Positions 711-41,817 of a stretch of DNA of 64,000 bases are shown one piece after another. The position numbers were made by a program, and so were the translations under genes. The notes beneath the pieces are model-generated. The model saw only the letters and a program-made list of their open reading frames with translations. It was not told the DNA's origin and made no database searches. This stretch comes from Lepidodermella squamata. Taxonomy: Eukaryota > Animalia > Gastrotricha. Position 1 is the stretch's first letter, and every line of letters starts with the position of its first letter. The DNA lies in assembly GCA_047495785.1 (NCBI GenBank), contig JBLDXI010000024.1:4402001-4466000 (forward strand), in the 5' to 3' direction.

Positions 711-3700
711 ATGTATATCCTATGTGTAATTTTAATACTACTCACCGTTGTAATTCAAGGTTTTTTTGGTAAAAATAAGCCGACTTTGATAAATTTTTTG
801 TTTGCAGGAGCCTGGTGTATTACTTATTGTAATTCTATTGGGGATTGCGAAAATGGGGGAACCTGTTCGAAGGGGCTATGCTATTGCCCCGTGCCGTGGG
901 GAGGCCATCGCTGCGAAAATAATAGTTGGTGACCGCTCTAGTCTCACAAGCAATTTGATAAGTGATAAATATACATCGTACAGACGGGAGATATTGTAAG
1001 GAGTCCGGCACCAACTATCCCGCGTGTAAAAACGGTGGATCCTGCATAAACGATGACCTTGGAGCATCATGCCTTTGCCCTCCTTTATTTACTGGGCGTT
1101 TTTGCGAGTTATGTAAGCTCAGCACGCTTACGCAAGTTGCTCATTATTACTTACTACTCATTATCACAGATAATTGTTCAACACCCTGCCAGAACAATGG
1201 TACTTGCACTGCTCAGTTAACTTGCAACTGCACAGCAGGATGGACTGGGTCAACATGCGCATCAGGTATAAGTGAAAGCTAAAATTATAACTTTTGATTC
1301 TTAACAAATTGAAAAATATTCATAAAAGATTATTCCCTTTAAGTCAGTCTCCAGCAAACTACAAGTGCAAATGTAGTCAGCATTGCAGGACGCTAAAAAA
1401 TCCAAAAACAATTTGCTTGTTCCTCGCACAGTGCGCGAAGTAGTATCCTCGAACTATTATCGGGGTTATTTTCGGGCCCTAATTTGTTGTCCAAAGGGTC
1501 CATTCTGTGGGTTTTTCCGGGGTTTTTTCTACTTTGGTATGCCGAACTGGGGGGGTACGATACCCCTCATTCCCCTTGTACGTCGCGCCCTCGCAGACGT
1601 TTCTCAGTTAGTGTTCGCGCGTTCGACAATTTCATCCAATTCCAGCGGGCGAATTACCTTGATAGCTTTGAGGTGTACACTTGAGTTGGTGGTGGGTATT
1701 GTGCTATTAACAGCTGCTACCGTAAATTGGTGCAAAATGGCCACGGAAAAAATGACCCCCTGGGGTTTTCGCATTTTGACTCGTTTCAGAGGGGCCTGAT
1801 TCCAATCTTAAAGAAAGCTCAATTTACCCCAGTTTGGGAAAAATTGGCAACGCGTACACTTATATTGGGTTTTTATTATAACGCGATTGTGAGGGTTGAA
1901 TGGTCGAGTGGCTTTAACGCGCCATCAGAATGACTATTGATTGAATTGATTGCGATTTCATATAATGGCATTCTGAAAATGATTGAACAGCTGTTTCGTC
2001 GCATTCTGTTCAATGACTGTTTTGATTTCCTAACCTGAACTCGTACTGCCGACTTGAGGTGATTAAGAACTCAGATCAAAATTCATGGCACTTAATCAGC
2101 CGCAATCGTCCGTTGATTTCAGGCGCTAACAAAAAATAGGCTTGCGTCGGGGTGTTTTCCAAATTCAATGTGCCCTTCAATGTGCCCTTTGTGCCTTGTT
2201 AATCAGCCATTTGTTCGAGTCCGTGCCTGAACGGCGGTAATTGCACAGCGCAAAATACATGCACATGTCCAGCTAGTTGGACTGGCTCAACTTGTGCCAC
2301 TCCTATCTGCTCGCCTGTGTGCTCCAACGGCGGAACCTGTAACGCCCAGTTGACGTGCAACTGCACTGCGAGCTGGACTGGCTCTCGATGCACGACTCGT
2401 GAGAAATTTCGAAAATTCAAGTTAAATTTGAGAAAGATTGTTTCATTCTCAGCAAAATGCTCGTCTCCATGCCAGAATGGAGGCACTTGCGTAGCTCCAA
2501 ACACTTGTTCCTGCCCTGCCGGTTGGACTGGTACAACATGTGGCACATTCACGTGCCCAGGAGGCTGCGCCAATGGGGGAACTTGTGCGGGTCCCTCAAC
2601 CTGTACATGCACGGGGCAATGGCAGGGTTCAAACTGCAGTTCTCGTAATCTATTTTCAGAGAGCAATTTATTTGATAACAATTTTGACTAATAACAGCTG
2701 TCTGCTCCTCACCATGCCAGAATGGTGGCACATGTTCGGCGCCTGGCGTTTGTTCGTGTGCGCCTACGTGGATGGGAGCAATTTGTAACACGCAAACGAC
2801 GACTAGTGAGTGATCAGCGACCAAAAATCTGCTGATTAATTTGTTTCTATTGCAGTTTGTACGCAAAATTCAGAGTGCGCGAACGGTGGAACGTGTACGA
2901 GTGGGTTGTGCTACTGTGTTGCTCCATACACGGGACCAGCTTGTTCATTAACAGGTAGGTTATTTTACCGGTGGTAGCGATGTAATTATGCAGTCAGCAC
3001 GAAGGGACGAGCATCTGCTCTACAAACGGCCTCGATTATCCGTGGTGTTCAAACGGAGGGACTTGCATCACCGTAGGCTCGGCGACACAATGCAGCTGTC
3101 CCCCAGGCGTTAGCGGTAGATATTGCGAAACTGGTACGTCTTTTGCATTTTAGTAGATTATTTTTTTAAATCCTCTTTCTCACAGTTTTGCCCCGTAAGT
3201 GACCCGCTTTCTTAGCTCAGGTCAGATGTATTCAACCTTACGACAGGATGCGAAAGTATAGAACTAACCGCAATGCCATGGTGCGGTCTCATTGGCTCGA
3301 CTGGTAACGGATCTAACGCTGTGACACCACTTGGCTGGGCCCCAGTGAACCCCGATAACAGACTATTTTTGACCGTAAACTTACCTTACGAGTTCACCGT
3401 TTCAACAATCGAAGTCGGGAAAGGCACCCTTTTCGCAGGATATGTCAGTTCTTACGCGATTTCCTTTTACGTGAAGCAGGCTCGGCTCGGCAATTTTTAT
3501 TATCCTGTCTTAACCAATCAAAACGACTCGTCGTCGCCATTGAAGGTTTGCGAACAATATTGGTATACAGTCGTAATTTCGCTGTTTGTTTAGTTATTTC
3601 CTGGTTACAACGGTGTCAGCTCTGGCACATCCAGACTATGTCCGAATATCCGTACTTCAGGACTTCGGCTGTGGCCGAAAAATTACACGAGTTTAAATTT

Positions 3701-6700
3701 CGCTATGACTGTGAAAATTTGGATCTGCCTACCCCACACTGGCTGCGTCACGTCGGGCATAGGACTGTGCGCGTCAACTTGCACGTGCCCTGTTGGCTAC
3801 AAGAGCAGCTACGGTTCAAACTGCGGTTAAATTACAATTTTCAAATTCAAATTTGTGAACATGTATACATTTCATCAACTTCAGATATATGGAGTATGCC
3901 ACCAGTCGATTGCGAGGATATTCTGATGCGGGACCGGACATCCCCCGATGGGGTTTACACGATCTATCCCCCTTCATTCCCTTCAATGCAAGTTTATTGC
4001 GACATGACAAGCATGGGAGGCGGCTGGACAGTGTTCCAGAAGCGCATCGATGGCTCGACGGATTTCTACCTGAATTGGGCAAACTACAAAGCAGGCTTTG
4101 GCAATCTCACTGCTAATTTCTGGCTAGGAAACGATAACATTCGCCGGTTGACTGCGCAGAACTACAATAGCATCCTTGCACTTTACATGGTCGCTCCTGA
4201 TGACGACCGCGGCGTCGCTGTGTACAAGGATTTCTATATTGAGGATGAAACTGATAATTACAGGTTCAGATCTAATGGATTTTTGGGTGGAAATGCTGGT
4301 TGGTTTAAAGCACTAAGATCCCTTCATATTCCACCTTACTGATACTCTTTCTACAGGAGATTCTATGACGTACCACTTTGACACCGTCTTCAGTACAGAA
4401 GATCACGATGGTTCGAACCTGGGTAACTGTTCAGTTACATTCAAAGGCGGTTGGTGGTAAGTCGGGACAATAGCCGAGCTATTTGCAGTGATCCCACTAG
4501 GTCTAGCTCTGAGGGGGGTAAATAGAGCCATTTTGAGCCCAAAATTAGCAAATCAACAGGGGGGACCCATACGTTTTTCAGAAATTTTCGAACGCCAGGG
4601 GGGTTTGTTTACCCCCCTTCCCCCCGTACTCGGAGCGCTGGCTATTTGTATCTGACAGTGAAATTTTCTCTTTGTTGACGTTATGACTATGCCAGATTAT
4701 ACCCTAATCACCCTAATCAGGCGTAGTCAAAAAGCGGGGCCAAGGTCTCTAGCCACCACGTAACATTTAATTTGGTATTGGGTTCTCGCAATCGACGCAA
4801 TCGATTCGGGCAGGTTTCAGAGGATTTCACTTTTCTTCCTGTTTTATTTCGCTATAATGTGCCTAATGGCCTAATTAGTCTGATTTGATTCGGCCTTAAC
4901 CAAATCCAAAATCCAAAGGTACTGGTGATTTATTTGTTTCACTGGGTGATTAGTATATACTTCTCAAATGAAGCAAAATTCCAAGCTAACAAAACACTGC
5001 CAAAACCGTTTGCTTTGACTCTACCATAACTGTAATTGCTCGGAAGTTGAATCAAAATTTCAACTTTCCTTCAACTCAACAACCTTGTTTGTCTTTTGGT
5101 GAAGTATTTGCATCCTCAGAAGACATTGACGGCAAAGCGGGAATCTCTTTAGGTTTTAGGCTTTCTTGTTTTTTCCACCTTCTTCTATTGTGTTACTGCA
5201 TAGATATCGTGTATAAGTATTCCAAATGCCTAAAATAGCAATAATCCATTATCTTGTTTTCAGGTACAAGGATTGCCACAGTGCCAACTTTAATGGGTAA
5301 GCGGGGGTTTAGATTTCATAGTTCACTGAGACTGGGGTGTAATTAAACAGGCGTTATGGCGCTACTGCTCGGGCGCAAATGCTGAATTACAACAGCTTCA
5401 AGAGTGACTACGTTGGCATGAAAACGACGAGAATGATGCTCCGAAGGAACAAGCCACAGGATACTTTGCCCTGTTAGTTTATGTTTTTTCCAACTTAACT
5501 GGGTATTAACAATTGATCTTACGGATTTCAGCGCAAGCTTTCCCGAAACCCCTAGATTGCGAGGAGATCCTTGTAGGCAATCCTCACGCCCCGAGCGGTG
5601 TATACCAAATATATCCGATTGGCTCTATTGGTCCAGTCTCTGTTTTCTGTGAAATGGTAGCCCACAGTGGGGGTTTTACAGTGATCCATCGAAACAAAAA
5701 TGATGGTTTAGACTTCAATAAGACATGGGCAGACTACGAAGTTGGGTTCGGGAACCTAAATGGCTCGCACTACATTGGCAACTCGATAATCTACCAACTC
5801 ACAAAAGGGACTGGCCTAAATTATATGCTAGTCATTTTTCTAGAAGACACTACAGGGGACCAGCGATCGGCTGTTTATACTGGATTTTCACTGCTGGACA
5901 CAATTAACTACACGCTGTCGATATCCGCAATGAATGGGGATGATCAGGGTGATTCCATGGCGAGTTCAAATAACCAACCTTTCCAGACCTATGACCAACC
6001 GAAAGGACGCTCTTGTGCTACGATGCGACCAGGAGCGTGGTGGTTTAAAGTGCCAACAAATGCAGACCCAGTCAACCCGGATTGCTCTGATGCTAACATG
6101 AATGGTATTGTTGGGGCCAACTCGTGGGAGAGGGGACTGTTTTGGAGCACCTGGAAGGGCAGGAACACATCCCTTGCCTCAAGCCTTATGATGATACGAT
6201 CTGGTAAATTGTGCAAAAACTCATCGCCATTCTGAACAGCAATTGTGTTTTAGTGAGCTACAAAGCTTCGGACTGCGTGGAAATATATTTCGGCAATTTC
6301 AATACAAGCGATGTATTTTGGCTTTTCCATCCGTCAGTTGGGTCTCTACAGGTTGTTTGTGATCCGCTGAACTACGTGACAGGATGGAAGGGATGGATCG
6401 TGAGTAACTTCAATGACTTTTGGGGTTTTTTGTTATAATTAGGACAACCTGCTTATCTGTTTTCTGACGCTTACACATTTCCTTTACCCAGTTACCGCGC
6501 TATTATTGTCGTGTCACAAAGATAGAATTGTGCTCAAAAATATAGGTCGAGTAGCTTTGCCAATTCGATATTTTACGAATATAAAATTGCAAATAATTCT
6601 AACAAATTTGTCAAGAGAATAACGACAACAGACGACGTTGTAAAAGAATATTGATTTGACTTCAGGCATCAATAACTTTTTTATGGATGAGAGTAATGAC

Positions 6701-9700
6701 CAAATGACTCCACAAAGGCTCTTATTGTCATTATTGTTATTATGACAGTGCGCCATTATAACATATCATTTTCTTAGGTTATCCAGCAACAGTATTTCAA
6801 TACGACATCATTTGCCAGAACCTGGTCGGAATACAAGAATGGATTCACGGCCCCGCCGTTCGCATTGACAAAGGATTTTTGGATCGGTGAGTTTTTGATA
6901 ATTTTTCCAAAATCGAGATCAAATTCTTCGCAGGTAACGAGATACTTTACGAATTGACCAAAGATAGCGCCTATCAGTTAGCTATCAGAATTATTCTGCA
7001 AAACAATACTGAGCTTCGTGCATATTACGGTGATTTCCAAGTCGGCAGCGAGGATGATGGTTACAGGCTATTTGTCAGTAATTACCAAGGCACTGCTGGG
7101 GATATGCTGTCAACCAAGCACAACTACCAGCAATTTTCGACCTCGGATCGAGGCCCTGCATCTGGGTGTTTCGCTCCGTATGGATTCACGGGGGGCTGGT
7201 GGTTCCCGAGTAACTGCGACTTTGATTCGAATTTGAATAACAAAATGTCCTCGAGCGCTGTCAATGCGACTTTGAAATGGGGAAACTTAGCAATAAAATC
7301 CATCAGAATGTTAATTCAACGCAAAAAATATCGTAAGCGTGAAGAGCTCTTAGATTCAAAGTTATACATGACATTTTCACAACAGCTAATCTCAAGAATG
7401 TTGCCAATGCTACAACGATCAATTTAAATTCGGCAGACTACGGCGTGGCAAGGTACGAATGCAACAGAAAGTATTACCCAGTTGGCGGTAGCGAAGAGAG
7501 AGTGCAAATCGTTGGCCCCTGGATATATTCCGGGAATCCACTTTCGTGCAGTCGTAAGTTGATTAGCTTTTCCCACGTTAGCCTTTATTATTTGTATTTG
7601 TCCTGCAGCTCGGCCTTTACCATACGACTGCAGTTCTATCCAGGATTACAACTCAGCACTGGGTTTTACTAGTGAATCGGGCGTATTCACGCTGAATGAG
7701 ACAACAGCCGGAAGCTTTGTCGCGTATTGCGATCAGGATACTATGGGTGGAGGCTGGACAGTAATCCAACGACGAGCAGATGGGAACCAGAGTTTCGCCC
7801 AAGACTTGGCTACTTATGAAACAGGCTTTGGCGATCCATTGGCTAATTATTGGCTTGGAAACGCTAAAATCAGAGCCATGACACAGGCTGGAGACTACGA
7901 ACTGCTGGTGCAGGTCGGAATGACCAACAATTTGGGCTATGCAGTGTATAGCAGCTTCTACCTCTCGGGAGCTAATAGCAGACTTGGTATCGCTGGTTAC
8001 AGCGCAGATTCAAAAATAGGAGATTCCCTCACAGCTCTCCAGGGAAATCCTTTTGTATTGGACACGTGTGGGATGGGTGGCTGGTGGATCAGTTCATCGT
8101 GCAATATAACCACGATTCAGAGCAATTTAAACAATTTGTATGGCTCTCAGGCTCAGGGATACATGAACATCTTCTGGCAGACTTTTACCACACCAGCTAC
8201 GACACCATTAGCTCGCACTGAGATGAAGATACGGCGAATCGTGCCGAGCGGAAAGTACATCAAGGCTCCGAACTACCAATGTAGCAATGGCGGCCAATCC
8301 ACTACTCTGACTAACATCTCCAGTCCCGAGCTTTGCATGGCTAAGTGCACCAACTTTACTACATATGCTTGCGTTATTTTCGTTTACAATCGCAATACTA
8401 AAGCTTGCAGTTTACGAAACCCAATCTGTAAGAATGGTGAAGGAGCTGTCAGCAGTGCGTCAGATACTTACTATCGAAATGAGCTTCTTAGCCATGTCAC
8501 AGCCGACTGCGGTCCTCCTCCTGGGATGATGAATACGCGGATGGAGATTGCCGGAATGCCAACTGTCATGTCTGTAAATTACACTTGCAAATACATTCCA
8601 TACTACAAAAATACACTGACTGCCCAAGATTGGTCTGCACTAACTTGCAATCAGACCACAGGACGCTGGACAGGCAACGCCCTTGACTGCCGAGGGGTAT
8701 GCGGCTTGTTGCCTGATACTACCGGTTCGAATTCACACATCGCCTCTGTTACAAACAATGCTGGTACTTTTACCATCTTATACGAATGCGATGAAAACTT
8801 CGAGTTGGGTTCAGGAGATCTCACCAAACTCTGCGCTTCTCCATATAGCTCTTTAACTGGTGCCGCGCACAATTGCGTCTCCACTCGTTGCAAAGATCCT
8901 CCAATTTTCTCGAACACCACTAATAACTTCACCGCTCCAACAGTAGTGGCTCCAGAACTGCGAAACACGCGAGGCAGTGTATGGGAATATCGATGTGACA
9001 CGCCTGGCTACGTTTTCCGTGACACAGGTCTAACATCCGCAACTTTGACCTGCGCGGTCTCCAAGCAATGGGAAGGAAACGTCGGGATTTGCAAACGTGA
9101 GTTTTTTTAATAAAACTGAGGAACAGAGCATTCGCACGTTTTAGTTTTTCTGACGTTTTGAGAAATTTCATCATTATTTCCCTCTCAGCTGACTGCTCTG
9201 CTATCGGCGGTTGTCAAAACGATGGATATTGCTACTTCCCGAACTCATGCGAGTGTATTGATGGTTGGACTGGTGCGAATTGCTCTATCGGCAAGATTTC
9301 GATCCTAATTGAATCAGAATTATTAAAGCGTATTTCAAACAGCTGATTGTTCGACACTGTCCAACTGCAGTACACATGGATTTTGCGAACAACCTGGCAA
9401 CTGCACGTGCGATGCTGGCTGGTCAGGGCCTGATTGCTCAACCCGTAAGTTCTGCGTATATTCGCTGGAATTCATTTGCTAGCTGAGTTGTGGTATTCAG
9501 CTATCTGCATTGGCGGTTGCAAAAATGGAGCGACATGTATTAGTCCCAACTTGTGCACTTGCACAGTTGGATGGCGCGGTGCAGATTGCAGCACCCGTGA
9601 GAATTGATAGGTTAACATATGTTGGTTGTCTAATTCATACGATTATTTCACAGCTAGCTGCTCGGCTACAACCGGCCTTTGCTCGAATGGCGGCTCATGT

Positions 9701-12700
9701 GTCGCCCCAAATACTTGCAGCTGTGCATCTGGTTGGAAGGATCCCACTTGTGACACATGTAATCATAGACCCCAATTAACAACTTTCTTCTTCCCACCTT
9801 TAATTTACAGTGGATTGTTCAGCTATTGGCAACTGTGCCAATGGCGGCACTTGCACCGGGCCGAACATTTGTACGTGCTCACCGGGCTGGACTGCGTCGA
9901 ACTGCACAACCGGTTAGTTCGGAAAAGGATTAATCAGTAATTTGTAGCGTGGTTATTTTCCAGCAATCTGCTCTGCCGTTTGCTTGAATGGCGGTACTTG
10001 CACTGCTCCCAACCTCTGCACTTGCGCGGCTGGCTGGACCGGTTCGGCATGTAGCAATCGTGAGTTTCCTTATTCTAATAGGCATAATTTCTTCGAATGG
10101 TGATTAAATCCCTAGCTGTTTGCTCACCACCTTGTTCAAACGGTGGATCATGTACTGCACCGAAGACATGCGCGTGCAAACCAGGCTGGATAGGCAGCAC
10201 ATGCGCCCAGGGTAACACCTGAACTCCAATAGCATGTTCACGGATTGATAAAGAATTTTTCAGCTGACTGTACAGCCTTGGGTGGCTGTTTGAATGGTGG
10301 GACCTGTAGTTCTCCTGGGAATTGTACTTGCTCGAAGGGATGGACGGGTGACAACTGCACAACACGTAAGGGCACTGATCGAATCGATAAAATAGATAGA
10401 CATTAAAATCTCTCAGCGGACTGTTCGGCAATTGGTGGCTGTTTAAACAACGGTACTTGCTCAGCACCTGATAACTGTACCTGCGATGCCAGCAAATGGC
10501 GTGGCACGAGATGCGAGAATCCAAATGTTAACTGCTCCAGCTTTGGATCTTGCTACAATGGAGGCACTTGCGTTGGGATAGATGTCTGCAGTTGTGCAAC
10601 TGGATGGAATGGTACAAGCTGCGCATTTCGTAAGTCCTTCGGGTTTTTCTTCAAGCTATTCCGATGGGCCATTCACCATTTAGCATATTGTTCAAGCATT
10701 GGAGAGTGCAAAAACGGCGGAATTTGTGCTCAGCCCAATGTTTGCACCTGCATTGGAGGTTGGACGGGCAGAGATTGTTCGGAGAGGAAGAACGAAACAG
10801 ATCCATCTACTGCCGTTTCGATCTCATTCATAACAGCGATGCCACCTCAAACTTTGATAGCAGCAGCGACTCCTTTCAGTGCTGTCGCAATTGAGGCTTC
10901 AATACGCATCAGCTCCACGGAGAATACAACAGCTCTAGCTGCGTCATCCGCGGCATTCATCGCAGACTTGGGCCCTGTAATGGCAAGATACGCCGAGCTA
11001 GCAAATCAGATGGCCCCGGAAGTTGTCGCCAACATTACAGTTGCTTACGCTACGGCGGCTAGTTCAGTCATGTTTGCTGTATCTGAAGCAGTCAGTAGCA
11101 ACGAAGAAACAACATCGAGCCCGCTATCCCTTGATCTCAACGATAAAAGCATTAAATGTACCACAGAATCGGCCGCGGCCACGACACCAAGCCCTAAAGC
11201 TGCGATGTCAACTGAAGACGTGAGTTTTGTAAGGAGGGATATCAAACCTATGAATTCTCATGTTTTGCTCAGTCATCGAAGCTGTATGGGAATTTCAACC
11301 AAATGATTGATGTCATGTTAAAGATGGTTGAGGCTAATGTTAAAACGGGCAAAAACTTCACATTCAACGGCAAATTTTTCTCAGTGGTTTTGAGTGTTAT
11401 CGATGCTAAGAAGCTACCGAGTTTGAGGCTGGAAACAATCCACGCGGCTGTGGTGTTTCCAAATACGACATCGACAGCGGAGTTTATTGATTCTAAGGCT
11501 TCGCGAGTTTCCATCAAAGACTCTGACATTGTCACCGTTGCAATCACAGCCTACATTGTTAATGTACTCGATCCTAAGCAGACGTTCAACATGCCAACTA
11601 TTTCGGTCAAAGTTCTCTACCAGAAGAAAGAGTTGATTCTAAAGAAAGGCTATCCAACGAAAATTACTGGAAAGCCAGTTGTCTCCAGAGCTGCTATGCT
11701 GAAATTGCAAAAATCTGACGCTCAGTGCGATGTGAGCAAGATTACATGCGACGTCAGCACAAACGCGGATACTATGGGATCATTGGCTCTTTTCCCGGTT
11801 TCTTCGGATTCAGGCGATTTTGTGCTGATATTCCCAGTCATCAAGTACAACTACACGGCTTATCTATCCCTGAATAGCACTCCTACAGTCAAGAGCTATA
11901 CTTGGTCTGTAAATGTTACTCAAACGAATGTCAATATGAGTGTTAATGCCAGCCTCGGAGAACTCAAGTTCAACTACAATACAGATGTCGAATTGAGAAT
12001 ATTGATCCCACAATCAGCATTGCAGGATTTCGTTGATATGCAAGGATTTTCTTCAAATGAAAATGTATCTTTCAAAATGCAGGTTTATACAAAGAAAGAC
12101 TTCTCAAGCCTTTCGACTTTTGAGGACTTGCCAGCCGATGCTTGCGAATTACAACGATGCTACGGTTACCATCTCAAGGTAGGATTCGCCAAGGCGCGGA
12201 ACACCCATTCAAGGAAAAAGCGCGATGCATCTGAAGCGAACGCTGATGATGATTTCGAGCTTGATCCCAGTTCGACTGAATCCGCAGTTACTTTCAAATC
12301 GTCATATTTTGGAGATTTTGGGGCCGATCTGGTGATATCCCCCAACACCATTGAATTCTCTGACATCTTCGCAAATTTCGCCACGCTAGTGTCAGACAAC
12401 GCATTCGTTCTCGCATTCCAAGTTGCCGCTGTTGTGTTCTTCATCGTCGGAGTTATTGTCGTTTGGCGATTTGACAAGCTGGACATCAAGGACTGGGCTT
12501 TCATGCCCTTGAAGAGCAATAAGCCATACGAGACGCACAAATATCTCGTTTCCGTCGATCACTTCGGCGTTAAAAATTATCATCTGAAGCCTGTGGTCCT
12601 ACTTCGAGCTTACGGTGATATCAGTGATACAAACTGGCGGGTCCTTGAAGATTGCGAGAGAGAATCGAATTTCGACGGAAGGAGACCAGCAAATTTCATG

Positions 12701-15700
12701 ATGACTACAACGCTGCCAATTGGTCACATCGAAGCAATTGAAATTCGAATTCACAGCCGATTCAGGGCCCCCCATGGAAGCAAGCCTCTTCAGATGCAGA
12801 TAGACAAAGTTGTGATGGTCGATATCGAAAAGGGGCAAAAGTTCGTTTTCTTGACCAAGGCTCCCATGAAAAGTGGAGAGATGAAGTTCAAAGAGCTTGC
12901 GACTGAGGATGAGATCAAAGGCTTCAAGTACTTGGTCAGCGCTCATTCTCGAGTTGGCTTGTTCAGCTCTCATCCATGGCTATCGATCGGGAGACGCCCC
13001 CTCCCAAGTAGCTGGACCAGATGCGAACGCCTGGCATGTGTGGTTAGTGCCCTTTTCATGGCCATGCTAGTGAATGCAATGTTTTACGGGAAAGAGAGCA
13101 AATCACCCCGAGTCGGCGTCAATATCGGAGGATTCTTCCGCCTGTCCTGGTTCACGGTCTACACAAGTTTCATCGGATGCGTCATCGTCATCCCTCCAAC
13201 TGCGATAATGGCCTTCATTTTCAAACGAATTCGACGTCGATCGGCTGAGAATAGCCAATACACAACAATATTCAACGTGGCTCTGGGATTAAAGCGAAGA
13301 TATGTCGACAGTAATGATGAGAAGAAGTCATTTCAGCTTCCTTACTACTGCGCTATCATTGCATGGATTTGTAAGTCTATCATCTTATATCAATTTCTTG
13401 TTAAATTAAGCGTGTTATAGTGGTCGCTGGCTGTGTTGGAGTCTCTTCATTCTTCATCGTCATGTACAGCCTGATGTGGGGCAAGGAGAAATCGCTGCAG
13501 TGGCTCAGTGGAATGGTCATGAGTGTTGTTCAGGACATAGTTATCATTCAAACAGTCAAGGTTGCATTGTTGTCTATCTGCAGTTCAACTTTGTTGTCTC
13601 TGCCTGATGACGGTCTCGACATTGGCAAGGTGACATTCTCGAAGAATAGCTCCAATAAGAAATCAGAGCTTTTCAAGCGCATGCGGAACATCATCGCAGG
13701 AATTTTCCACCACATCATTTACGTTGTTGCGTTTGCAATTGTGATCTCAGCAACGCAGAACAGGCTGGCCTATCAACAAATCGGGGACTTGAAGCCTTTG
13801 GTTGAGATGCGTGATGTAGCCCAGATGGGCGTGATCAATGAATACAGTAAAATTTACTCGTGGCTGAATAACAAACTTCTGCCGCAATTTTTCACTGCCA
13901 ACCAGTTGAGCAAGGGCTTGAAATTCAACTTGAAAAATATCTATCAAGTTTTAAATCACGATGTGGTAGTTCTCGGCCCCGTTCGCTTGCGACAACATAG
14001 AGTCCAATCGGGTAAGTAGGCTTCATTTCATTAGAAAATGCATGTGAAAGCGTTGGAATATTCCAGCGCCTTGCCTGTTAGAGACTTCCCCGGCTCCTCA
14101 GTATGTCAAGAAATTTGCAGATCTTCTCGTGGTCAATACAACGAAATGTCAGAATCAATACGTTGGTCAACTTGGAGTCGGAGCGGACACTGAGACCAGA
14201 CAGTTTTCGAATTTCAATTGGACGTACAACGTGGATACCAATGCGTGGTTGCCAGAGAACGTAACGACAGAGCAGGCTCCGTGGATTCATCGAGAAGACA
14301 GTGGGATTCCTTACTCGGGCTGGCAAGCTACCTACACTAGCGGTGGTTACTACGTCGACATACCTGTCACCCTTGCGAAGGCTCAAGCCTTCGTTGCTGG
14401 GCTTCAGTCAAGGAGATGGCTTGACAATGCAACTTCAGTCTTGTTCGTCGATATGGTTTTATTTAATGCCCAGGTCAACTTGTTTATAGCAGTTAAAGTT
14501 GTGTTCGAAGCCTTGAGTGCTGGAGGAATGACTTATCACGCGAGAATGTACCCTCTGCAGCTGTACCAATACATTGGAGCCGGTTCAATCTTCATCTTCG
14601 CCATTCAAGCCATCTGGATATTGCTTGTTTTCTCGCATCTGGTCAAGGTTTTCATCAAAATGAAGAAGGAAGGATTCACAAAGTTCCGAAAAGATGGATG
14701 GAACTTGTTGGAGCTGTGCCAGATATTGATAGCCTTGGCCATCGTTGGCTTGTTCATTGCTCGAATTCTTGTTGTTATGAAGGCTGTTACTAGACTTCAA
14801 ACCGATCGAACTTCATTTGTAAATTTCGATCTTCTGGTCAATTGGGAAGCTTTGATGGCCAACTTGTACGGCATCACTTTTTTCATGACGATGTTGCTGT
14901 TTTTTCGCCATCTCACCTTCAACAAATATTGGTGTATCTTCTTGGGGACCCTCTCCAAGGGCAAAGGCGACCTGTCATCTTTCCTCTTCGCTTTTGTTCT
15001 AATAACTGTTCTTTTCGCTGAACTTGGTTACCTGAGTCTAAACACGACTTGTGACGAGTTTCAATCGTTCACCGCTTCGATTATGACCCTGGTTCAGAAT
15101 ATCATCGGAGTAACTGGGTCTCTGATGTCACTGAGTTTCACATCGCGCTTCATCATGTTGTTCTGCATGGCTTACTCAACAATTGTCATGTTTCTGGCTG
15201 TTCAGGTCTTCATGACAATCATTTCAGTTACATACAGCCAAGTTGCAGAAAATGTTGAAGAAAACACCAACTGGGACCATGAACTATCGAGCTACATGGC
15301 AGAAGAATTAACCATCACTGTTGCTAAACCCAATGTTGAGCAACGAACCACTGCTCCAGTTTTTAAACCTGTTGGAGAACGCAATTTGGCAAAACGTGAG
15401 AATTTTCAAAAAATGATGCTTCCATTACATCCTATTACCTTAGTGGAACTTTCAATCCACCGCTTGACGCGGCTTGTTGAGGCGAAAATATCGGACGAAA
15501 CCCTTGAACGCGTTGCGAAACGCGAACGTTGCCTAATGCATTGGATGGATTTGAAACTGCGCGCATTACGCAATCGAAGATGGACGAAACCTGCTCAGTT
15601 TAAGGTCAATGCTATGCCTAGTCCGAAATTGCTTTTGGGAATGCCCAGTAAGAAGCTGCTTGCCAGCTTCCCGGTCGGACAGGTTCGTGGAATGTACCCC

Positions 15701-15748
15701 AAGAAACAGGGCGGTGACAGACAATTGAATCCCTACTCTACACATTGA
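711..15748 (+). CDS. Polycystin-1-like receptor/channel subunit, copy 1 (multi-exon; EGF-discoidin-4xFReD-PAN-sushi-EGF ectodomain, PLAT, PKD channel domain); appears intact
   Basis: ATG 711 with signal peptide [17 protein letters not shown]. Many CxNGGxC EGF exons. FReD motifs ([31 protein letters not shown]). PNTIEF-TM1-PLAT (VLLRAYGD...[14 protein letters not shown]) followed by HPWLS..R...S.WTRCERL..., [40 protein letters not shown], which are PKD1/PKD1L hallmarks. About 30 GT-AG introns that keep the frame, plus one GC-AG intron. Stop at 15746-15748. Confidence 0.9.
1720..1935. mobile_element. Truncated, diverged copy of the 33653-34696 family (opposite orientation) in an intron of copy 1
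   Basis: TA|CCGTAAATTGGTGCAAAATGGCCACGGAAAAAATGACCCCC matches the reverse complement of ~34610-34696. Also carries GATTGTGAGGGTTGAATGGTCGAGTGG. Confidence 0.75.
3186..3194 (+). other. 9-nt phase-1 microexon (equivalents at 22749-22757, 48196-48204, 41274-41282)
   Basis: cacag|TTTTGCCCC|gtaagt. Reading through the downstream intron hits TGA. Exon length and flanking splice sites are conserved in all four copies. Confidence 0.8.
4486..4640. mobile_element. hAT-like MITE in intron of copy 1
   Basis: 8-bp TSD GCTATTTG on both sides (4478-85, 4641-48); short imperfect TIR CAGTGATCC / GGAGCGCTG. Confidence 0.75.
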
Positions 15749-16713
15749 AAGAGCTTTAATGACATATCAAAACGACTCATGTTAACATGACATAGACATT
15801 TCCAAGATTATTTTGATTGAAATTTGAAATGGAGATTTTATTCGCTTTTTTTATCGCAGCTAAGCTTCTGAATCCTTTTCAGTTTTCTGACGATAGTATT
15901 GAATAAAAACTGACAGGCATTGTAAAGACTTGTCCGCGATTCAAAGAGCAGTAACTTCCTTTCCAAATATATGCATGATTCTCTCCCAGAAGATGTAAGA
16001 TGTAACGATAGCATGCTGATAATTTCGAATCAGCGTAGATTTCTGGGCCGGAATAGCAATCCTGCAAATCCGGTTTCCTGGCTTGGCCTATTCCCTCTCG
16101 TAAGAAAGGCCAGTCGAGCCACTGTTAACACTTGACACATACTTGCAAATCCTCAGAGGGACCATTGGGCTTTCATTCGAGCAGTCTCAGAGGGAGATGC
16201 TGAGAAGGAGGCCTCGGATGTGAGGGTTGTCTCCTCATAACAGTTCACAATCCAACAGGCATATGCGAGATTCTGATTTAGCAAGCCGCCACCTCAGAAA
16301 AATTGAAAAAATCGCATATTGGTTGCGCATACACAGCAAACGTCTGCAGTTGTAGCTGCAAAGCGAGTGGTTGAGATAAGGTCTTAATGGATAAGTCTTG
16401 AGACAGCAGTCGCGGACTTTCGACTTTGTAATTGGTTTTTTACCCCTGGAAAAATCTTGCTGATAATTTCCTGACTTACTTCAACGAAAAAAATAGCGCC
16501 GTGGGATTTAGATTTAAGACACCTGGGATTTAAGACATGTTGACAACTTTGTTTACAGTAATTTGTCGTGTCTGTTTTTTTTTAGTTGCTATCTAAATGG
16601 CTAAAGCACGCCACCATATCAACGGCCTCTTAAGTAAATACTTTTAAAGTCCCGATAATTCTTTATCACCCTTCCAGAAAAAAGAGAGCCCTGTATCAAG
16701 ACAGAAAATCACC

Positions 16714-16750
16714 TATATAAACCCTGGCTACCGCAACACAGGATCATTTT
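16714..16750 (+). promoter_or_regulatory. TATA box plus Inr-like element of the transglutaminase gene
   Basis: TATATAAA at 16714-16721, TCATTT ~30 nt downstream (16744), ATG at 16778. Confidence 0.6.
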
Positions 16751-16777
16751 TTCACAGCGAGTAACTAATTTCCGACA

Positions 16778-18217
16778 ATGAGATCCGTCACAGCAGTCGC
16801 AGTATTCGCGCTATTCGCAGCTGTTGCATTCGGTGCTAAATGGGATAGAAACAACGACCCATCGAGATGGAGCCCAGCCTTCGAATATAAGCTCGAAAAA
16901 CTGCCGCTGAAGGGCAGCACAAAAACCAAGCCGTGGAGTGACACATATTGGCCAAGCTACCAAGGTGGCATCGCCAACCGTTGGCAAGACGAGCAGAACG
17001 ATTCGCCCGGCTTCAACTACCAGCTGCACACTCTGGACGAGCTGAAAAACGGCAGCATTAACATCAACATCCTGTCACCCGCCGAGAAGTTCGACATCTT
17101 CAACTCTCGCTACGACTACCCACTGCTAAACTCTGAATGGCAGCGTTGCAGCCCTGACGATGCGACGTGGGAGGGCATCTGCCACGGCTGGGCTCCAGCT
17201 GCGGTCTTCTACCAACAGCCGAATCCAGTGACGCTTAAAAACAAGGAAGGCCTCGACATCCAATTTGGCTCCAGCGATGTCAAGGCGCTGTTGTCCTATT
17301 TCTTGGCGCAATTCGCTCAAAACCAGGAGAAGACGCAATTCATCGCCAACCGCTGCAACGTCGATCTCAGGAAAAACCCGGAAAAGGGCAACAACCCCGA
17401 GTGCTGGGATGCCAACCCCGGAACATTTCACATCATGCTGGCAAATATGCTAGGTCTGTCTAGCACTGGTTTCGTCGCTGATATCGATCGAAGCTTGGAG
17501 GTCTGGAACCAGCCCATCGCCAGTTACGAGTACACTCTTGGCAACACCAGCGCGCCCAGCCAGAACGCCGCTCCAGGTACCGCGAAGGAGCAATCTGTCA
17601 GCTTCACAATGCACTACACTAAGGAAACCAGGCCAACCGTTTCAGCCCACGATGCGCTGATCCTAGACAAGCAGTACGAATACGTTCTAGACCTGGACGC
17701 CGATGGCAACATTCTCGGCGGCTCGTACGACGAGGAGCAATGGGATCGTCTCGACTTCATGTGGGCCGAGGAAGTGCCGGCTTTCTATGGCTACTTCGCG
17801 TCGCTGGACGCCATCTACAGGGCGGCGACTGGCACCCAAGACCAGCCACGCTTCTACTCTCGCGCGAGAACTCTGGCGAACTTCCACCCGAATGTCGTCA
17901 CCACCGGTAGCATCAGCCTGCCGTCGTACGACGACAACTCGCGCCATGCGTGGTTCGTGCCAGCTGCCACTGACTCGAGTCTCCGTCTTCGCTTCAATTC
18001 GTTCAACACTCGTCGCCACACGGACTTTGTTCGCGTTTTCGAGGTCGAGAACGGCAACATCGGCGCCCCTCTGGCTGTGCTCCACGGAAACACGCTGCCG
18101 AGTGAAATCGTTGTTCGCCCGGGTGTTTCTGCTCTCATCACGTTCAACGTCGACCATATGGCTGCTCGCCGCAAGTCGTCTGTATTCGGAACTGGTTTCG
18201 AGCTTTCTGTTTTGTGA
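16778..18217 (+). CDS. Secreted GP42-type transglutaminase ('transglutaminase elicitor' family) with C-terminal CUB-like domain, intronless
   Basis: 479-aa single ORF with signal peptide. Family motifs PWSDTYWPSYQGGIANRW, LSPAEKFD, WEGICHGWAPAA (catalytic Cys-His), DVKALLS, NPGTFH, VWNQPI (Pep-13-like) and YEYVLDLDADGNILGG. C-terminal GSISLPSYDDNS..W..LRLRFNSFNT...DFVRVF...ITF..D....GF pattern typical of CUB. Confidence 0.88.
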   Translation: MRSVTAVAVFALFAAVAFGAKWDRNNDPSRWSPAFEYKLEKLPLKGSTKTKPWSDTYWPSYQGGIANRWQDEQNDSPGFNYQLHTLDELKNGSININILSPAEKFDIFNSRYDYPLLNSEWQRCSPDDATWEGICHGWAPAAVFYQQPNPVTLKNKEGLDIQFGSSDVKALLSYFLAQFAQNQEKTQFIANRCNVDLRKNPEKGNNPECWDANPGTFHIMLANMLGLSSTGFVADIDRSLEVWNQPIASYEYTLGNTSAPSQNAAPGTAKEQSVSFTMHYTKETRPTVSAHDALILDKQYEYVLDLDADGNILGGSYDEEQWDRLDFMWAEEVPAFYGYFASLDAIYRAATGTQDQPRFYSRARTLANFHPNVVTTGSISLPSYDDNSRHAWFVPAATDSSLRLRFNSFNTRRHTDFVRVFEVENGNIGAPLAVLHGNTLPSEIVVRPGVSALITFNVDHMAARRKSSVFGTGFELSVL

Positions 18218-18307
18218 TCTGTAATCGGAAATACTTGATGAATATCAATTTGAGTGACACGCTTGTCACGACTTCCAGAAAGATAATGTTTCATTTCAAG
18301 AAGTTCC

Positions 18308-18313
18308 AATAAA
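18308..18313 (+). promoter_or_regulatory. Polyadenylation signal of the transglutaminase gene
   Basis: AATAAA ~90 nt after the stop codon. Confidence 0.5.
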
Positions 18314-19922: not shown

Positions 19923-20221
19923 TAGGGTGTTGAAAAAATAATGGTTGGGCTATTTTTGGAGTTGAACTTTGGCCAGACAACACGCGATTGATGTTTAGCT
20001 AACCTGTCCGACCTGTCCACTTTGAGCATAAAAAGTGGTTATACAATTCCCGTCAATAATCTTCAAAGAGACTAAATTCTTACTTGAAATCTCATTGCCA
20101 ATTTTACCGAGAAAAACTGTGAAGAAATCCTAGAAGACGGATTTTGAAAAACAGACCCGTATCCGCCCAAACTCGGCCCGTGGACAACTCTGAGGCCAAC
20201 CATTATTTCTTGAACACTCTG
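19923..20221. mobile_element. hAT-like MITE upstream of copy 2
   Basis: Imperfect TIRs TAGGGTGTTGAAAAAATAATGGTTGG / CCAACCATTATTTCTTGAACACTCTG; no clean TSD. Confidence 0.55.
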
Positions 20222-29200: not shown

Positions 29201-29284
29201 TCTTGCACTGGACCGAACACTTGTACATGCACAGCGGGCTGGACAGGGTCGAATTGCACAACCGGTTTGTTATGATTAGTAGGG

Positions 29285-33000: not shown

Positions 33001-33652
33001 TGTCATGGTTGACATCGAAAAGGGACAGAAGTTTGTTTTCTCGACCAAAGCTCTCATGAAAAGTGGAGAGATGAAGTTCAAAGAGCTTGCGACTGAGGAT
33101 GAGATCAAAGGCTTCAAGTCCTTGGTTAGCGCTCATTCTCGAGTTGGCTTGTTCAGTTCTCATCCATGGCTATCCATCACAAGGCGTCCTCTTCCGAGTA
33201 ACTGGACCAGATGCGAACGACTGGCTTGTGTTGTTAGTGCCCTCTTCATGGCCATGCTTGTGAGTGCAATGTTTTACGGAAAAGAGAGTAAATCACCCCG
33301 AGTTGGAGTCAATATCGGGGGATTCTTCCGATTGTCTTGGTTTACAGTCTACACTAGCTTCATCGGATGCGTCATCGTCATCCCTCCAACTGCGATCATG
33401 GCCTTCATTTTCAAGCGAATTCGACGTCGATCGGCTGAGAATAGCCAATACACAACTATTTTCAACGTGGCCTTGGGATTGAAGCGAAGAGATGTCGACA
33501 GCAAAGAGAAGAAGCCATTCCAGCTTCCATACTACTGCGCTATCATTGCATGGTTCTGTAAGTTTCAATTCAATTAAATCCATCCTTGCATTTAGTTTAC
33601 TTCTAGTGGTTGCTGGTTGCATTGGGGCATCATCGTTTTTCATTATCATGTA

Positions 33653-41139: not shown

Positions 41140-41514
41140 TTCGTATTCTGCCGCAAGTGGGCGACAATAAATGGCTACTCCGTGTAGTTGTCCGTATGGA
41201 GCTACTGGTCGAAACTGCGAAAATGCGTTATCATCATAGTTGTCATCATTCGCAATCTGCCTTCATTTTGTAGTTACTCCCCGTAAGTGACCTTTCAGCC
41301 TATGCAAATTTTCATTCCTGTGGGAATTATGCGGGACAGGATGTGACAGCGATGAAATTACAGTCAAGTATAGTTTTTGGGGCGGAAACCTTATAAGCTC
41401 TAACGCGACGCTCTAGGAACAAGAGATTGTTATGGGGTCTATTGTTGCTATCCAAAGTCACAAAATCTATCATCCAAGTCGGAAATGGCGCAAATGCTGC
41501 AGGTTATGTGACAG
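41140..41514 (+). pseudogene. Relic fragment of a fourth PKD1-like paralog (EGF exon end, 9-nt microexon, start of discoidin exon)
   Basis: Encodes ...CSCPYGATGRNCEN, then ag|TTACTCCCC|gtaagt (microexon), then ag|GATGTGACAGC (RCDSDEITV) and IQVGNGANAAGYVT (cf. [14 protein letters not shown] in copy 1). Confidence 0.65.
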
Positions 41515-41817
41515 GCACTACACAAAGGGAACCAGACCAGCGGTGACAGCTCTCACGATGCGTTGATCCTAGAAAAGCAGTATGAATATGAATACGTCCT
41601 TGACTTGGATGCGGATGGAAACATTCTCGGCGGTTACGACGATGAGCAATGGGAACGTCTCGACTTCATGTGGGCCGAGGAAGTGCCGGCATCCCATCAC
41701 GTTCAACGCCGACCAGATGGCTGCTCGCCGCAAGTCGTCTGTATTCGGAACTGGTTTCGAACTTTCTGTTTTGTGATCTGTAAATCGGTAATACTTGATG
41801 AATATCAATTTGAGTGA
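41515..41817 (+). pseudogene. Deleted relic of the transglutaminase-CUB gene (3' part and 3'UTR)
   Basis: Strong nucleotide match to 17611-17781, then jumps to ~18133-18257 (~350-bp internal deletion at ~41690). Small indels are present and the 5' half is missing. Confidence 0.9.

What the first reader, a model, noticed from the sequence alone, without database searches (positions are those of the whole stretch)
16714..18313. Intronless GP42/Pep-13-type transglutaminase-CUB gene: probable domesticated horizontal transfer inside the receptor array
Seen: an intronless, visibly GC-richer ORF amid intron-dense genes. It has intact WEGICHGW catalytic Cys-His, a downstream DVKAL Asp, and VWNQPIASYEYTL aligning with the oomycete Pep-13 epitope VWNQPVRGFKVYE. 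It also has a signal peptide, TATA/Inr and polyA signal. Known: this family is described from oomycetes and bacteria, not as a typical animal gene. A decayed second copy at 41515-41817 argues it is chromosomal rather than contamination. Inference: a secreted cross-linking enzyme acquired by HGT and fused to a cysteine-free CUB-like domain.
Basis: partly seen in the sequence, partly recalled or inferred. Interest (0 to 1): 0.85.

Follow-up and report, generated by a model that had tools for sequence, protein, structure and literature searches.

The report
Foreign transglutaminase-CUB gene in an invertebrate
A small invertebrate, probably a rotifer, carries an intact, expressed gene for a secreted GP42-type transglutaminase with a CUB domain; it most likely came ready-made from a free-living protist, which adds one well-documented case to the known gene borrowing of such animals.

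Summary
Window 16778-18217 (+) is an intact, intronless 479-codon gene. It encodes a signal peptide, a GP42-family (Pfam TGase_elicitor) domain with the Cys-His motif, the Asp and VWNQP all conserved, and a cysteine-free CUB-fold domain.

cDNA contigs place a capped 5' end at 16746, 32 nt after the TATA box. Coverage stops at the AATAAA signal. DNA contigs join the gene to the neighbouring polycystin-1-like genes at the same depth. A decayed fragment lies at 41458-41817. Selection is purifying.

- Oomycete GP42 is a distant cousin (22% identity).
- The nearest relatives are Adineta-type bdelloid rotifer genes (64-67%).
- Next come unnamed sequences and the euglenid Petalomonas, inside a large group of protist TGase-CUB genes.
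- The closest bacterial relatives, mostly Bdellovibrionota, have the enzyme domain only.

So the CUB fusion predates the animal copy, and a protist donor is most likely. Horizontal transfer is well supported. It is a known phenomenon in such animals, so interest is moderate.

Enzyme activity and biological role are untested, and the host species was not identified.

The parts
16714..16721 (+). TATA box (TATATAAA), 32 to 25 nt upstream of the mapped transcript start
   Evidence: Sequence; position relative to the cDNA 5' end
16746..16777 (+). Transcript start (A of TCATTT, Inr-like) and 32-nt 5' UTR
   Evidence: run X2 contig begins at 16746 and is preceded by GTATCAACGCAGAGTACATGGGG. I recognise this as a SMART-type template-switch oligo tail (my own knowledge), so the library is cDNA and this is an mRNA 5' end.
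16778..18217 (+). Intronless coding sequence, 479 codons plus stop
   Evidence: cDNA contigs cover it without gaps or joints.
16778..16834 (+). Predicted signal peptide (residues 1-19, hydrophobic core, A-F-G before the likely cleavage site)
   Evidence: Translation. Low-confidence N-terminal helix in the model. Every homologue inspected has a similar N-terminus. Inferred, since no signal-peptide predictor was available.
16838..17812 (+). GP42-type (TGase_elicitor) catalytic domain, residues about 21-345
   Evidence: Pfam E 8.3e-33. HMMER against 3TW5 E 4.4e-21. Foldseek against 3tw5_A E 2.3e-20, TM 0.69 by target. ESM Atlas Bdellovibrionota TGase_elicitor cluster TM 0.84, rmsd 2.0.
17180..17185 (+). 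Catalytic Cys135-His136 ('CH' motif)
   Evidence: Aligned to the Ser(Cys)-His of 3TW5. C135 is invariant and H136 is present in at least 90% of 45 relatives. The CH motif is described for GP42 in PMC10318531.
17276..17278 (+). Asp167 (DVKAL), candidate third catalytic residue on the neighbouring helix
   Evidence: Aligned to DLKAL of GP42. Invariant in alignment A1. The role is inferred from the GP42 description in PMC10318531.
17501..17515 (+). VWNQP motif (residues 242-246), the conserved start of the stretch that is Pep-13 in Phytophthora
   Evidence: alignment. V242, W243, N244 and P246 are invariant and Q245 is present in at least 90%. The Pep-13 sequence is taken from PMC9879208.
17891..18214 (+). 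C-terminal CUB-fold domain without cysteines (residues about 372-479)
   Evidence: Pfam CUB is below cut-off for this protein, but 33 of 45 relatives match CUB, best E 4.2e-13. Foldseek matches TSG-6 CUB 2wno at TM 0.71, and C1r, MASP and neuropilin CUBs at TM 0.64-0.71.
18308..18313 (+). Poly(A) signal AATAAA; transcript coverage ends just after it
   Evidence: Sequence. Contigs of X2 and X4 end at about 18267-18316, with zero depth beyond 18473.
41458..41817 (+). Decayed fragment of a second copy. It holds pieces matching codons about 261-335 (frame-shifted, 83% nt) and 454-479 plus 40 nt of 3' UTR (95% nt). About 354 nt are deleted between the pieces, and the first 260 codons are absent.
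   Evidence: The same deleted form is seen as a joint in the DNA contigs of run X1.
1060..15748 (+). Context: polycystin-1-like receptor gene, unit 1 (Fibrinogen_C, PAN, Sushi, Polycystin_dom, PKD_channel exons). Units 2 and 3 lie at about 21101-37404 and 45038-62823.
   Evidence: Pfam on exons. Self-comparison gives 77-90% nt identity between units.

Best explanation
This is a real, transcribed, single-exon animal gene for a secreted two-domain protein.

Domains: the N-terminal domain is a GP42-family papain-like enzyme (Pfam TGase_elicitor) with its unusual adjacent Cys-His pair and partner Asp intact. The C-terminal domain is a disulfide-free CUB beta-sandwich.

Origin: the gene was not inherited from animal ancestors. 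It belongs to a group of TGase-CUB genes of free-living heterotrophic protists. The enzyme domain of that group is sister to enzyme-only genes of bacteria, mostly Bdellovibrionota. The animal copy and its closest relatives, the genes of Adineta-type bdelloid rotifers, nest inside the protist group. Next to them sit unnamed sequences, one on a GC-rich contig made of tandem gene copies, and the euglenid Petalomonas. The most likely history is therefore a eukaryote-to-animal transfer of an already fused gene. It then gained a TATA/Inr promoter and a poly(A) signal, was kept under purifying selection, and was duplicated locally, with one copy decaying.

Mechanism (inferred from GP42, not shown here): after secretion, Cys135 forms a thioester with protein-bound glutamine and passes the acyl group to a lysine or another amine, cross-linking extracellular proteins. 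The CUB domain serves as the binding or targeting module.
For: Identity and fold. Catalytic residues and VWNQP are invariant or nearly so across 45 relatives.

Expression and gene ends: the cDNA contig carries a template-switch tail at 16746. Summed contig depth is 289-925 over the gene against 0-14 in the flanks, and coverage ends at the poly(A) signal.

Chromosomal location: X1 DNA contigs 15520-17582 and 18172-19978 join the gene to both flanks at the same depth, about 60-84. The relic lies in the same array.

Selection: 19 synonymous against 3 non-synonymous differences among the variants seen in runs. dN/dS is 0.10-0.16 against the Adineta-type genes.

Phylogeny, careful tree on enzyme-domain columns only:
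- bacteria versus CUB-bearing eukaryotes: 100/99
- window + Adineta-type: 100/100
- plus P0019/P0020: 99/91
- plus P0017: 99/95
- plus Petalomonas/P0032: 100/99

The AU test rejects placing the animal clade outside all other CUB-bearing sequences (p 0.0009).

The CUB-bearing relatives sit in eukaryotic contexts. These include SPX/EXS, RhoGEF and RING genes, separase and HECT genes, and the Acrasis gene, whose called span (1,471 nt for 475 residues) suggests one short intron.

In the genome-contig scan, 437 bacterial or archaeal loci encode a relative. The best 80 are nearly all Bdellovibrionota, and none is matched beyond about residue 390.

Adineta ricciae is the only named animal among the best 120 hits.
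Against: - The host species was not identified, and most relatives are unnamed environmental sequences. P0017, P0019, P0020 and P0032 could themselves be animals or protists.
- Petalomonas and Stygamoeba are transcriptome-only records, so contamination cannot be excluded.
- The backbone of the CUB group is poorly resolved (open forks).
- The group used in the AU test was chosen after the tree had been seen.
- No complete survey of animal proteomes was possible. 'Absent from other animals' rests on the named hits and on the lack of papers.
- GC3 is far above the host's in both the window and the Adineta copy. That would be odd for an old, ameliorated transfer unless codon bias keeps it high.
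- Enzyme activity, substrate and site of expression are untested.
Confidence: 0.72

Rival explanations
1. Vertical inheritance. A TGase-CUB gene was present in early eukaryotes, was kept in a few protists and in rotifer-type animals, and was lost everywhere else.
For: The architecture occurs in Discoba (Acrasis, Petalomonas) and Amoebozoa (Stygamoeba) as well as in animals. The CUB-bearing sequences form one clade against bacteria (100/99).
Against: The animal clade sits next to a euglenid and apart from the amoebozoan and from Acrasis, which does not follow organismal relationships. Holding the animals outside is rejected. The only named animal among the best 120 hits of a 5.8-billion-protein search is Adineta ricciae. 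The gene is intronless among intron-bearing neighbours and has a deviant GC3. Neighbours differ completely between the window, A. ricciae and the P0273 contigs.
Confidence: 0.1
2. An enzyme-only gene came directly from an oomycete or a bacterium, and the CUB-like domain was added inside the animal.
For: Bacterial relatives are numerous and 37-46% identical over the enzyme domain. CUB is a common animal domain. The literature knows the family from oomycetes and Vibrio.
Against: The C-terminal domain of the window protein is homologous to that of the protist proteins, with BLASTP E down to 1e-15 for non-animal members. Searched alone, it finds only this family. The enzyme-domain tree puts the animal genes inside the CUB-bearing clade, not with bacteria. 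GP42 is far more distant, at 78 bits and 22% identity.
Confidence: 0.04
3. Same gene and same origin, but the protein works as a hydrolase (a papain-like protease or glutamine deamidase) or as a non-catalytic binding protein, not as a cross-linking transglutaminase.
For: The fold belongs to the papain-like superfamily, in which proteases, amidases and transglutaminases share the Cys-His chemistry (PMC10318531). To my knowledge, activity has been measured only for Phytophthora GP42, which is 22% identical. Many relatives in predatory Bdellovibrionota and in Myxococcota are fused to P-domain or PPC modules typical of secreted proteases.
Against: All residues tied to GP42 catalysis, including VWNQP, are conserved. 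Purifying selection on the catalytic motif argues against a non-catalytic role. No evidence favours hydrolysis over acyl transfer.
Confidence: 0.2
4. Artefact: a contaminant contig or a chimeric assembly placed a microbial gene among animal genes.
For: The higher GC, the lack of introns and the microbial affinities are the usual warning signs.
Against: Short-read DNA contigs of X1 cross both junctions with no mismatch and at host depth. A decayed paralogous fragment lies 23 kb downstream in the same array. The gene has a TATA box, an Inr-like start with a cap-type extra G in the cDNA, and AATAAA. Transcripts at least 95% identical are found in three other runs from two other studies.
Confidence: 0.02

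Closest known systems
GP42 Ca2+-dependent transglutaminase of Phytophthora sojae (PDB 3TW5; Pfam PF16683 TGase_elicitor), the source of the Pep-13 plant immune elicitor
   Same: Same Pfam family and fold. Same adjacent Cys-His motif, same aligned Asp and same VWNQP core. Both are secreted.
   Different: Only 22% identity in the structural alignment. GP42 has no CUB domain. Residues 7-13 of Pep-13 are not conserved. GP42 is a cell-wall protein of a plant pathogen, whereas this is an animal gene. GP42 is a distant branch of the family, not the donor.
Unstudied TGase-CUB proteins of free-living protists (Acrasis kona, annotated 'Csmd3'; Petalomonas cantuscygni; Stygamoeba regulata; many metatranscriptome sequences)
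   Same: Same two-domain architecture, length (about 460-490 aa) and signal peptide. Identity is 38-52% over the full length. The animal genes nest among them.
   Different: The hosts are protists. At least the Acrasis gene seems to have an intron. Most of them match Pfam CUB clearly, while the window's CUB is more divergent and has no cysteines.
Adineta ricciae uncharacterised protein (P0010) and 12 related environmental sequences
   Same: Sister clade (100/100). Identity is 64-67% over the full length. Intronless, with the same architecture and a GC3 likewise above the host's.
   Different: Different genomic neighbours: Ty3 element and AIG1 GTPases, or TPR/ART genes, against polycystin-1-like genes here. 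dS between them is saturated.
TGase_elicitor proteins of Bdellovibrionota and Myxococcota
   Same: Enzyme domain 37-46% identical, TM 0.84. Secreted or lipoprotein-type N-termini.
   Different: No CUB domain. Some carry P_proprotein or PPC domains instead. They are bacterial genes, often several per genome.
Horizontally acquired genes of bdelloid rotifers (general phenomenon, from my own knowledge of the field)
   Same: Intronless foreign gene with a eukaryotic promoter, expressed, near repeats, and shared with Adineta.
   Different: The probable donor here is a eukaryote, not a bacterium or fungus. I found no paper reporting this family in animals. The host was not shown to be a bdelloid, and its GC of about 44% exceeds that of the Adineta loci (38%).

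Membership tests
GP42 / TGase_elicitor (PF16683) | Profile match above Pfam's gathering score | tested here: met
   114.1 bits against a cut-off of 25, E 8.3e-33
GP42 / TGase_elicitor (PF16683) | Adjacent Cys-His ('CH') catalytic motif on the helix, plus an Asp on a neighbouring helix | tested here: met
   C135-H136 and D167 align to the GP42 positions. They are invariant or nearly so in 45 relatives. The motif is described in PMC10318531.
GP42 / TGase_elicitor (PF16683) | GP42 fold | tested here: met
   AlphaFold model pLDDT 88.7. Foldseek against 3tw5_A gives E 2.3e-20, TM 0.69 by target.
GP42 / TGase_elicitor (PF16683) | Ca2+-dependent transglutaminase activity | not testable with these tools
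   Needs a recombinant protein and an amine-incorporation assay
GP42 / TGase_elicitor (PF16683) | Complete Pep-13 elicitor epitope (VWNQPVRGFKVYE) | tested here: not met
   Only VWNQP plus I-for-V are shared; the remaining seven residues differ. This defines the Phytophthora elicitor, not the enzyme family.
CUB domain (PF00431) | Profile match above the gathering score | tested here: not met
   16.5 bits against a cut-off of 21.4 for the window protein. However, 33 of 45 homologues match at E up to 0.01, best 4.2e-13.
CUB domain (PF00431) | CUB beta-sandwich fold | tested here: met
   Foldseek matches TSG-6 CUB 2wno at TM 0.71 and rmsd 2.9, C1r CUB2 at 0.65, and neuropilin and MASP CUBs at 0.64-0.71.
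CUB domain (PF00431) | Conserved disulfide-forming cysteines (typical of canonical CUB domains, from my own knowledge) | tested here: not met
   No cysteine in residues 345-479 (translation)
Horizontally acquired, domesticated animal gene | Physically linked to bona fide animal genes | tested here: met
   Polycystin-1-like genes lie on both sides. DNA contigs bridge both junctions at host depth.
Horizontally acquired, domesticated animal gene | Nested within non-animal sequences in a phylogeny | tested here: met
   Caveats: many rows are unnamed, and the backbone is weak.
Horizontally acquired, domesticated animal gene | Absent from most other animals | tested here: inconclusive
   Adineta ricciae is the only named animal among the best 120 hits. 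No paper reports the family in animals. No taxon-labelled survey was possible.
Horizontally acquired, domesticated animal gene | Transcribed and under purifying selection | tested here: met
   cDNA 5' end and coverage. 19 synonymous against 3 non-synonymous variants. dN/dS 0.10-0.16.

The most novel reading that the evidence does not exclude
A ready-made secreted cross-linking enzyme (GP42-type domain already fused to CUB) passed from a euglenozoan-like protist into rotifer-type animals; such protists are plausible prey (my inference). Its closest non-animal relative sits in a head-to-tail tandem array with pyrimidine-rich spacers. The gene was kept as a highly expressed extracellular enzyme. 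The second copy may still be intact and expressed in other strains while it has decayed in this genome, which would be a presence/absence polymorphism of a foreign gene caught in the act.
Probability: 0.3. Interest if true: 0.55.

Novelty: new variant of a known kind. Interest (0 to 1): 0.42.

Why it matters
It extends the GP42 'transglutaminase elicitor' family beyond oomycetes and bacteria, the only hosts in the papers I could search. The family also includes a large, undescribed TGase-CUB branch in free-living protists and a domesticated copy in animals.

It gives a clean example, supported by expression data, of probable eukaryote-to-animal gene transfer. The architecture shows that the fusion came first.

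It also offers a simple assay target: a second, structurally unrelated kind of transglutaminase in an animal. Such an enzyme could matter for extracellular matrices, egg envelopes, adhesives or defence in microscopic invertebrates. None of this changes what is known about how horizontal transfer works in such animals.

Tried and rejected
1. Host identification failed.
- The exact protein is not on record.
- A search with one polycystin exon found a single unnamed hit, because full-length relatives are too long for the length filter.
- Run organisms are coded.
The host is therefore only 'probably a rotifer', taken from other agents' untested notes and from the Adineta sister group.

2. Searches that gave nothing new.
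- The ESM Atlas feature search gave no usable hit.
- The CUB region searched alone returned only the same family.
- Reiss et al. 2011 (PMC3234954) is not held. The catalytic description comes second-hand from PMC10318531.

3. Transposon carriage. I looked for target-site duplications or terminal repeats around the gene and found none of note.

4. Shared flanks. I tested whether gene and relic share flanking sequence, and they do not. The 'duplicated unit' idea stays unproven.

5. Oomycete donor rejected on score and identity. An oomycete sequence could not be added to the tree because none was available by reference.

6. Contamination rejected.

Full report
WHAT IS THERE

The window holds one uninterrupted ORF at 16778-18217 on the + strand, 479 codons. 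Pfam places residues 129-330 in TGase_elicitor (PF16683) at E 8.3e-33, 114 bits against a cut-off of 25. It gives a sub-threshold CUB match for residues 380-462.

Among solved structures, the only significant relative by sequence is 3TW5, the GP42 transglutaminase of Phytophthora sojae (E 4.4e-21). In that alignment:
- the query's EGICHGWAPAA lies on GP42's FGISHAWSPAA;
- DVKALLS lies on DLKALVS;
- EVWNQPIAS lies on EVWNQPVRG.

PMC10318531 describes GP42 as having an unusual 'CH' motif, with the histidine right after the cysteine, interacting with an Asn or with an Asp on a nearby non-core helix. PMC9879208 gives Pep-13 as VWNQPVRGFKVYE.

In an alignment of 45 full-length relatives, C135, D167, V242, W243, N244 and P246 are invariant. 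H136 and Q245 are present in at least 90%.

But VWNQP is a motif of the whole family, and the rest of Pep-13 is not conserved here.

STRUCTURE

An AlphaFold model built on that alignment has mean pLDDT 88.7 and pTM 0.89.
- Foldseek's best PDB match is 3tw5_A (E 2.3e-20, TM 0.69 by target, 22% identity).
- The next matches are all CUB domains: TSG-6 2wno at TM 0.71 and rmsd 2.9, then C1r, MASP, neuropilin, PCPE-1 and enteropeptidase.
- 33 of the 45 relatives match Pfam CUB at E up to 0.01, best 4.2e-13.

The C-terminal domain is therefore a true but divergent CUB. In the window protein it contains no cysteine, which is visible in the translation.

The N-terminus has a hydrophobic core followed by A-F-G, as do all relatives inspected. 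I read this as a signal peptide. That is an inference, because no predictor was available.

IS IT A REAL, CHROMOSOMAL, WORKING GENE?

Laying public contigs on 15300-20300 gave four results.

1. In run X1, probably the source sample, DNA contigs 15520-17582 and 18172-19978 match perfectly. They join the gene to the last polycystin exon upstream and to the downstream spacer. Depth over the gene (about 60-84) equals depth over the flanks.

2. In run X2, a contig starts at 16746 and is preceded by GTATCAACGCAGAGTACATGGGG. I recognise this as the tail of a SMART-type template-switch oligo with one extra G (my own knowledge). X2 is therefore cDNA, and 16746 is an mRNA 5' end. That position is the A of TCATTT, 32 nt after TATATAAA at 16714-16721.

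3. Summed contig depth in X2 is 289-925 over the gene and 0-14 in the flanks. Coverage in X2-X4 stops at about 18267-18316, at the AATAAA of 18308-18313.

4. No joints interrupt the coding region, so it is intronless.

Selection is purifying. The 22 single-base variants listed inside the ORF comprise 19 synonymous and 3 non-synonymous changes. Against the Adineta ricciae gene and a related ENA contig, dN/dS is 0.10 and 0.16, with dS saturated.

Contamination or chimeric assembly is thus very unlikely.

SURROUNDINGS

The gene lies between the first and second of three tandem polycystin-1-like genes. Their exons hold Fibrinogen_C, PAN, Sushi, Polycystin_dom and PKD_channel. The three units are 77-90% identical at the DNA level.

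A fragment of a second transglutaminase copy lies about 4 kb after unit 2:
- 41515-41690 matches gene positions 17611-17781 at 83%, with indels of +2, +6 and -3;
- 41692-41817 matches 18133-18257 at 95%;
- about 354 nt are missing between the two pieces, and the first 260 codons are gone.

Similarity between gene and relic ends exactly at these borders, and neither flank is shared. The relic proves local duplication and decay. It does not prove that the transglutaminase was part of the receptor duplication unit.

The gene's GC3 is 0.69 against about 0.50 in eight neighbouring exons. The Adineta copy shows the same excess, GC3 0.65 in a locus of 38% GC.

RELATIVES AND ORIGIN

A search of 5.8 billion proteins found 833 relatives among the 8,000 candidates that were scored.
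- The 13 best full-length hits (64-67% identity) are short environmental contigs plus Adineta ricciae. There the gene is also intronless and lies beside a Ty3 element and AIG1 GTPase genes.
- A further member occurs on contigs with TPR and ART genes in several metagenomes.
- Next come full-length proteins at 38-52% identity with the same two domains. They include two from Acrasis kona, one from Petalomonas cantuscygni and one from Stygamoeba regulata.
- Two unnamed members lie on gene-dense contigs with plainly eukaryotic neighbours: SPX/EXS, RhoGEF, RING, separase and HECT. The called span of the Acrasis gene (1,471 nt for 475 residues) suggests one short intron.
- Of 267 retrieved relatives, 76 carry the C-terminal domain.

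Proteins of about 370 residues covering only the enzyme domain follow at 42-48% identity. One of them is named, a Silvanigrellales bacterium.

A scan of one genome per bacterial or archaeal species found 437 loci.
- The best 80 are almost all Bdellovibrionota: Silvanigrellales, Oligoflexales, Bacteriovoracales and Bdellovibrio.
- Identity is 35-46%.
- None is matched beyond about residue 390.
- The ESM Atlas shape search agrees. The best cluster is Bdellovibrionota (TM 0.84), and Myxococcota versions are fused to P_proprotein or PPC domains.

A careful maximum-likelihood tree was built on the enzyme-domain columns only: 57 rows, 20 named bacteria as outgroup, LG+C20+F+G4. Supports are ultrafast bootstrap / SH-aLRT:
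- bacteria against CUB-bearing eukaryotes: 100/99
- window + Adineta-type clade: 100/100
- plus P0019/P0020: 99/91
- plus P0017: 99/95
- plus Petalomonas and P0032: 100/99

This set lies inside the CUB-bearing group, whose deeper forks are unresolved.

Forcing all other CUB-bearing sequences into one clade, with the animals outside them, costs 66 log-likelihood units and is rejected by the AU test (p 0.0009). The caveat is that this group was defined after the tree had been seen. An earlier quick tree of 105 rows gave the same picture.

P0019 comes from an 11.5-kb contig of 57% GC. The contig consists of at least seven head-to-tail copies with about 238-nt spacers that end in pyrimidine runs. 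I take this as reminiscent of kinetoplastid-type gene arrays (my own knowledge, an inference).

MOST LIKELY HISTORY

A bacterial GP42-type enzyme entered eukaryotes and was fused to CUB in protists. One such fused gene, from a lineage near euglenozoans, was then transferred into rotifer-type animals.

'Oomycete type' describes only the family's textbook member. Vertical inheritance with massive loss remains possible but fits the tree, the intron pattern, the composition and the lack of shared neighbours poorly.

FUNCTION

What is shown: a secreted-type N-terminus, an intact catalytic motif, the GP42 fold, a CUB fold, expression and constraint.

What is inferred from GP42: Ca2+-dependent acyl transfer from protein glutamine to lysine, that is, extracellular cross-linking, with CUB as a targeting module.

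Because the fold is papain-like, and because many bacterial relatives belong to predatory bacteria and carry protease-type accessory domains, a hydrolytic activity is a serious alternative. I put it at about 0.2.

HOST

I could not name the species. Earlier notes of this scan call the genome 'probably a rotifer' and report other protist-type genes shared with bdelloids. I did not test those notes. They fit the Adineta sister group.

The window's GC (about 44%) is above that of the Adineta loci (38-42%).

UNRESOLVED

In runs X3 and X4, contigs that look like the intact gene run at position 18257 straight into the sequence that follows the relic, window 41818-41847. Those contigs cover 17642-18257, carry 15 differences and lack the 354-nt deletion. 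In X3 all depth at the 3' end is of this type, whereas in X2 none is. Three explanations remain open:
- another strain still has an intact, expressed second copy where this genome has the relic;
- gene conversion has produced mosaics;
- the contigs are chimeric through a 44-nt stretch that is identical in gene and relic.

VERDICT

This is a new, well-supported case of a foreign gene in an animal of a group known for such genes. It has an architecture and a probable eukaryotic donor that I found in no paper of the searchable library. Interest is moderate.

Noticed in passing
L004:1-11453: An ENA metagenome contig of 57% GC consists of at least seven head-to-tail copies of a 475-aa TGase-CUB gene (0-13 differences between copies). 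The spacers are about 238 nt and end in pyrimidine runs. With P0020, this is the closest outgroup of the animal clade. The layout recalls kinetoplastid-type arrays (my inference).
   Followed up: partly
window 41818-41880 and 17642-18257: Contigs of runs X3 and X4 join an undeleted, gene-like coding end to the flank that follows the relic, which has its own AATAAA at about 41874. This suggests an intact, expressed second copy in another strain, gene conversion, or chimeric contigs.
   Followed up: partly
window 17583-17641: The source DNA run X1 holds a minor variant (depth 27 against 63) with five changes. Three of them (17632, 17638, 17641) are the bases found in the relic, which hints at gene conversion between the copies.
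   Followed up: no
window 40125-41114 and 34049-34554: Two palindromic self-matches of about 990 nt and 506 nt, each about 84% identical to its own reverse complement. The larger one ends about 350-400 nt upstream of the transglutaminase relic.
   Followed up: no
window 18640-18973 and 19809-20142: DNA contig depth in X1 rises about 5- to 15-fold above the single-copy level, so these are short, high-copy repeats just downstream of the gene. A 28-nt inverted repeat pair at 19924-19951 / 20193-20220 flanks 241 nt, which looks MITE-like.
   Followed up: no
L008-L087 (genome-contig scan): The bacterial relatives of the enzyme domain are concentrated in Bdellovibrionota (Silvanigrellales, Oligoflexales, Bacteriovoracales), often with several paralogues per genome and lipoprotein-type N-termini. 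Myxococcota versions carry P_proprotein or PPC domains. The published link of this family is to marine Vibrio.
   Followed up: partly
L001, L002, L088-L090: The Adineta-type orthologues have unrelated neighbours: a Ty3 retroelement, a piggyBac-type transposase and AIG1 GTPases in A. ricciae, and TPR_12 and ART-TPR genes in the metagenome contigs. There is no shared gene order with the window.
   Followed up: partly
window 1060-15748, 21101-37404, 45038-62823: Three tandem polycystin-1-like genes, 77-90% identical at the DNA level. Their exons encode Fibrinogen_C, PAN and Sushi modules ahead of the polycystin and channel domains.
   Followed up: partly
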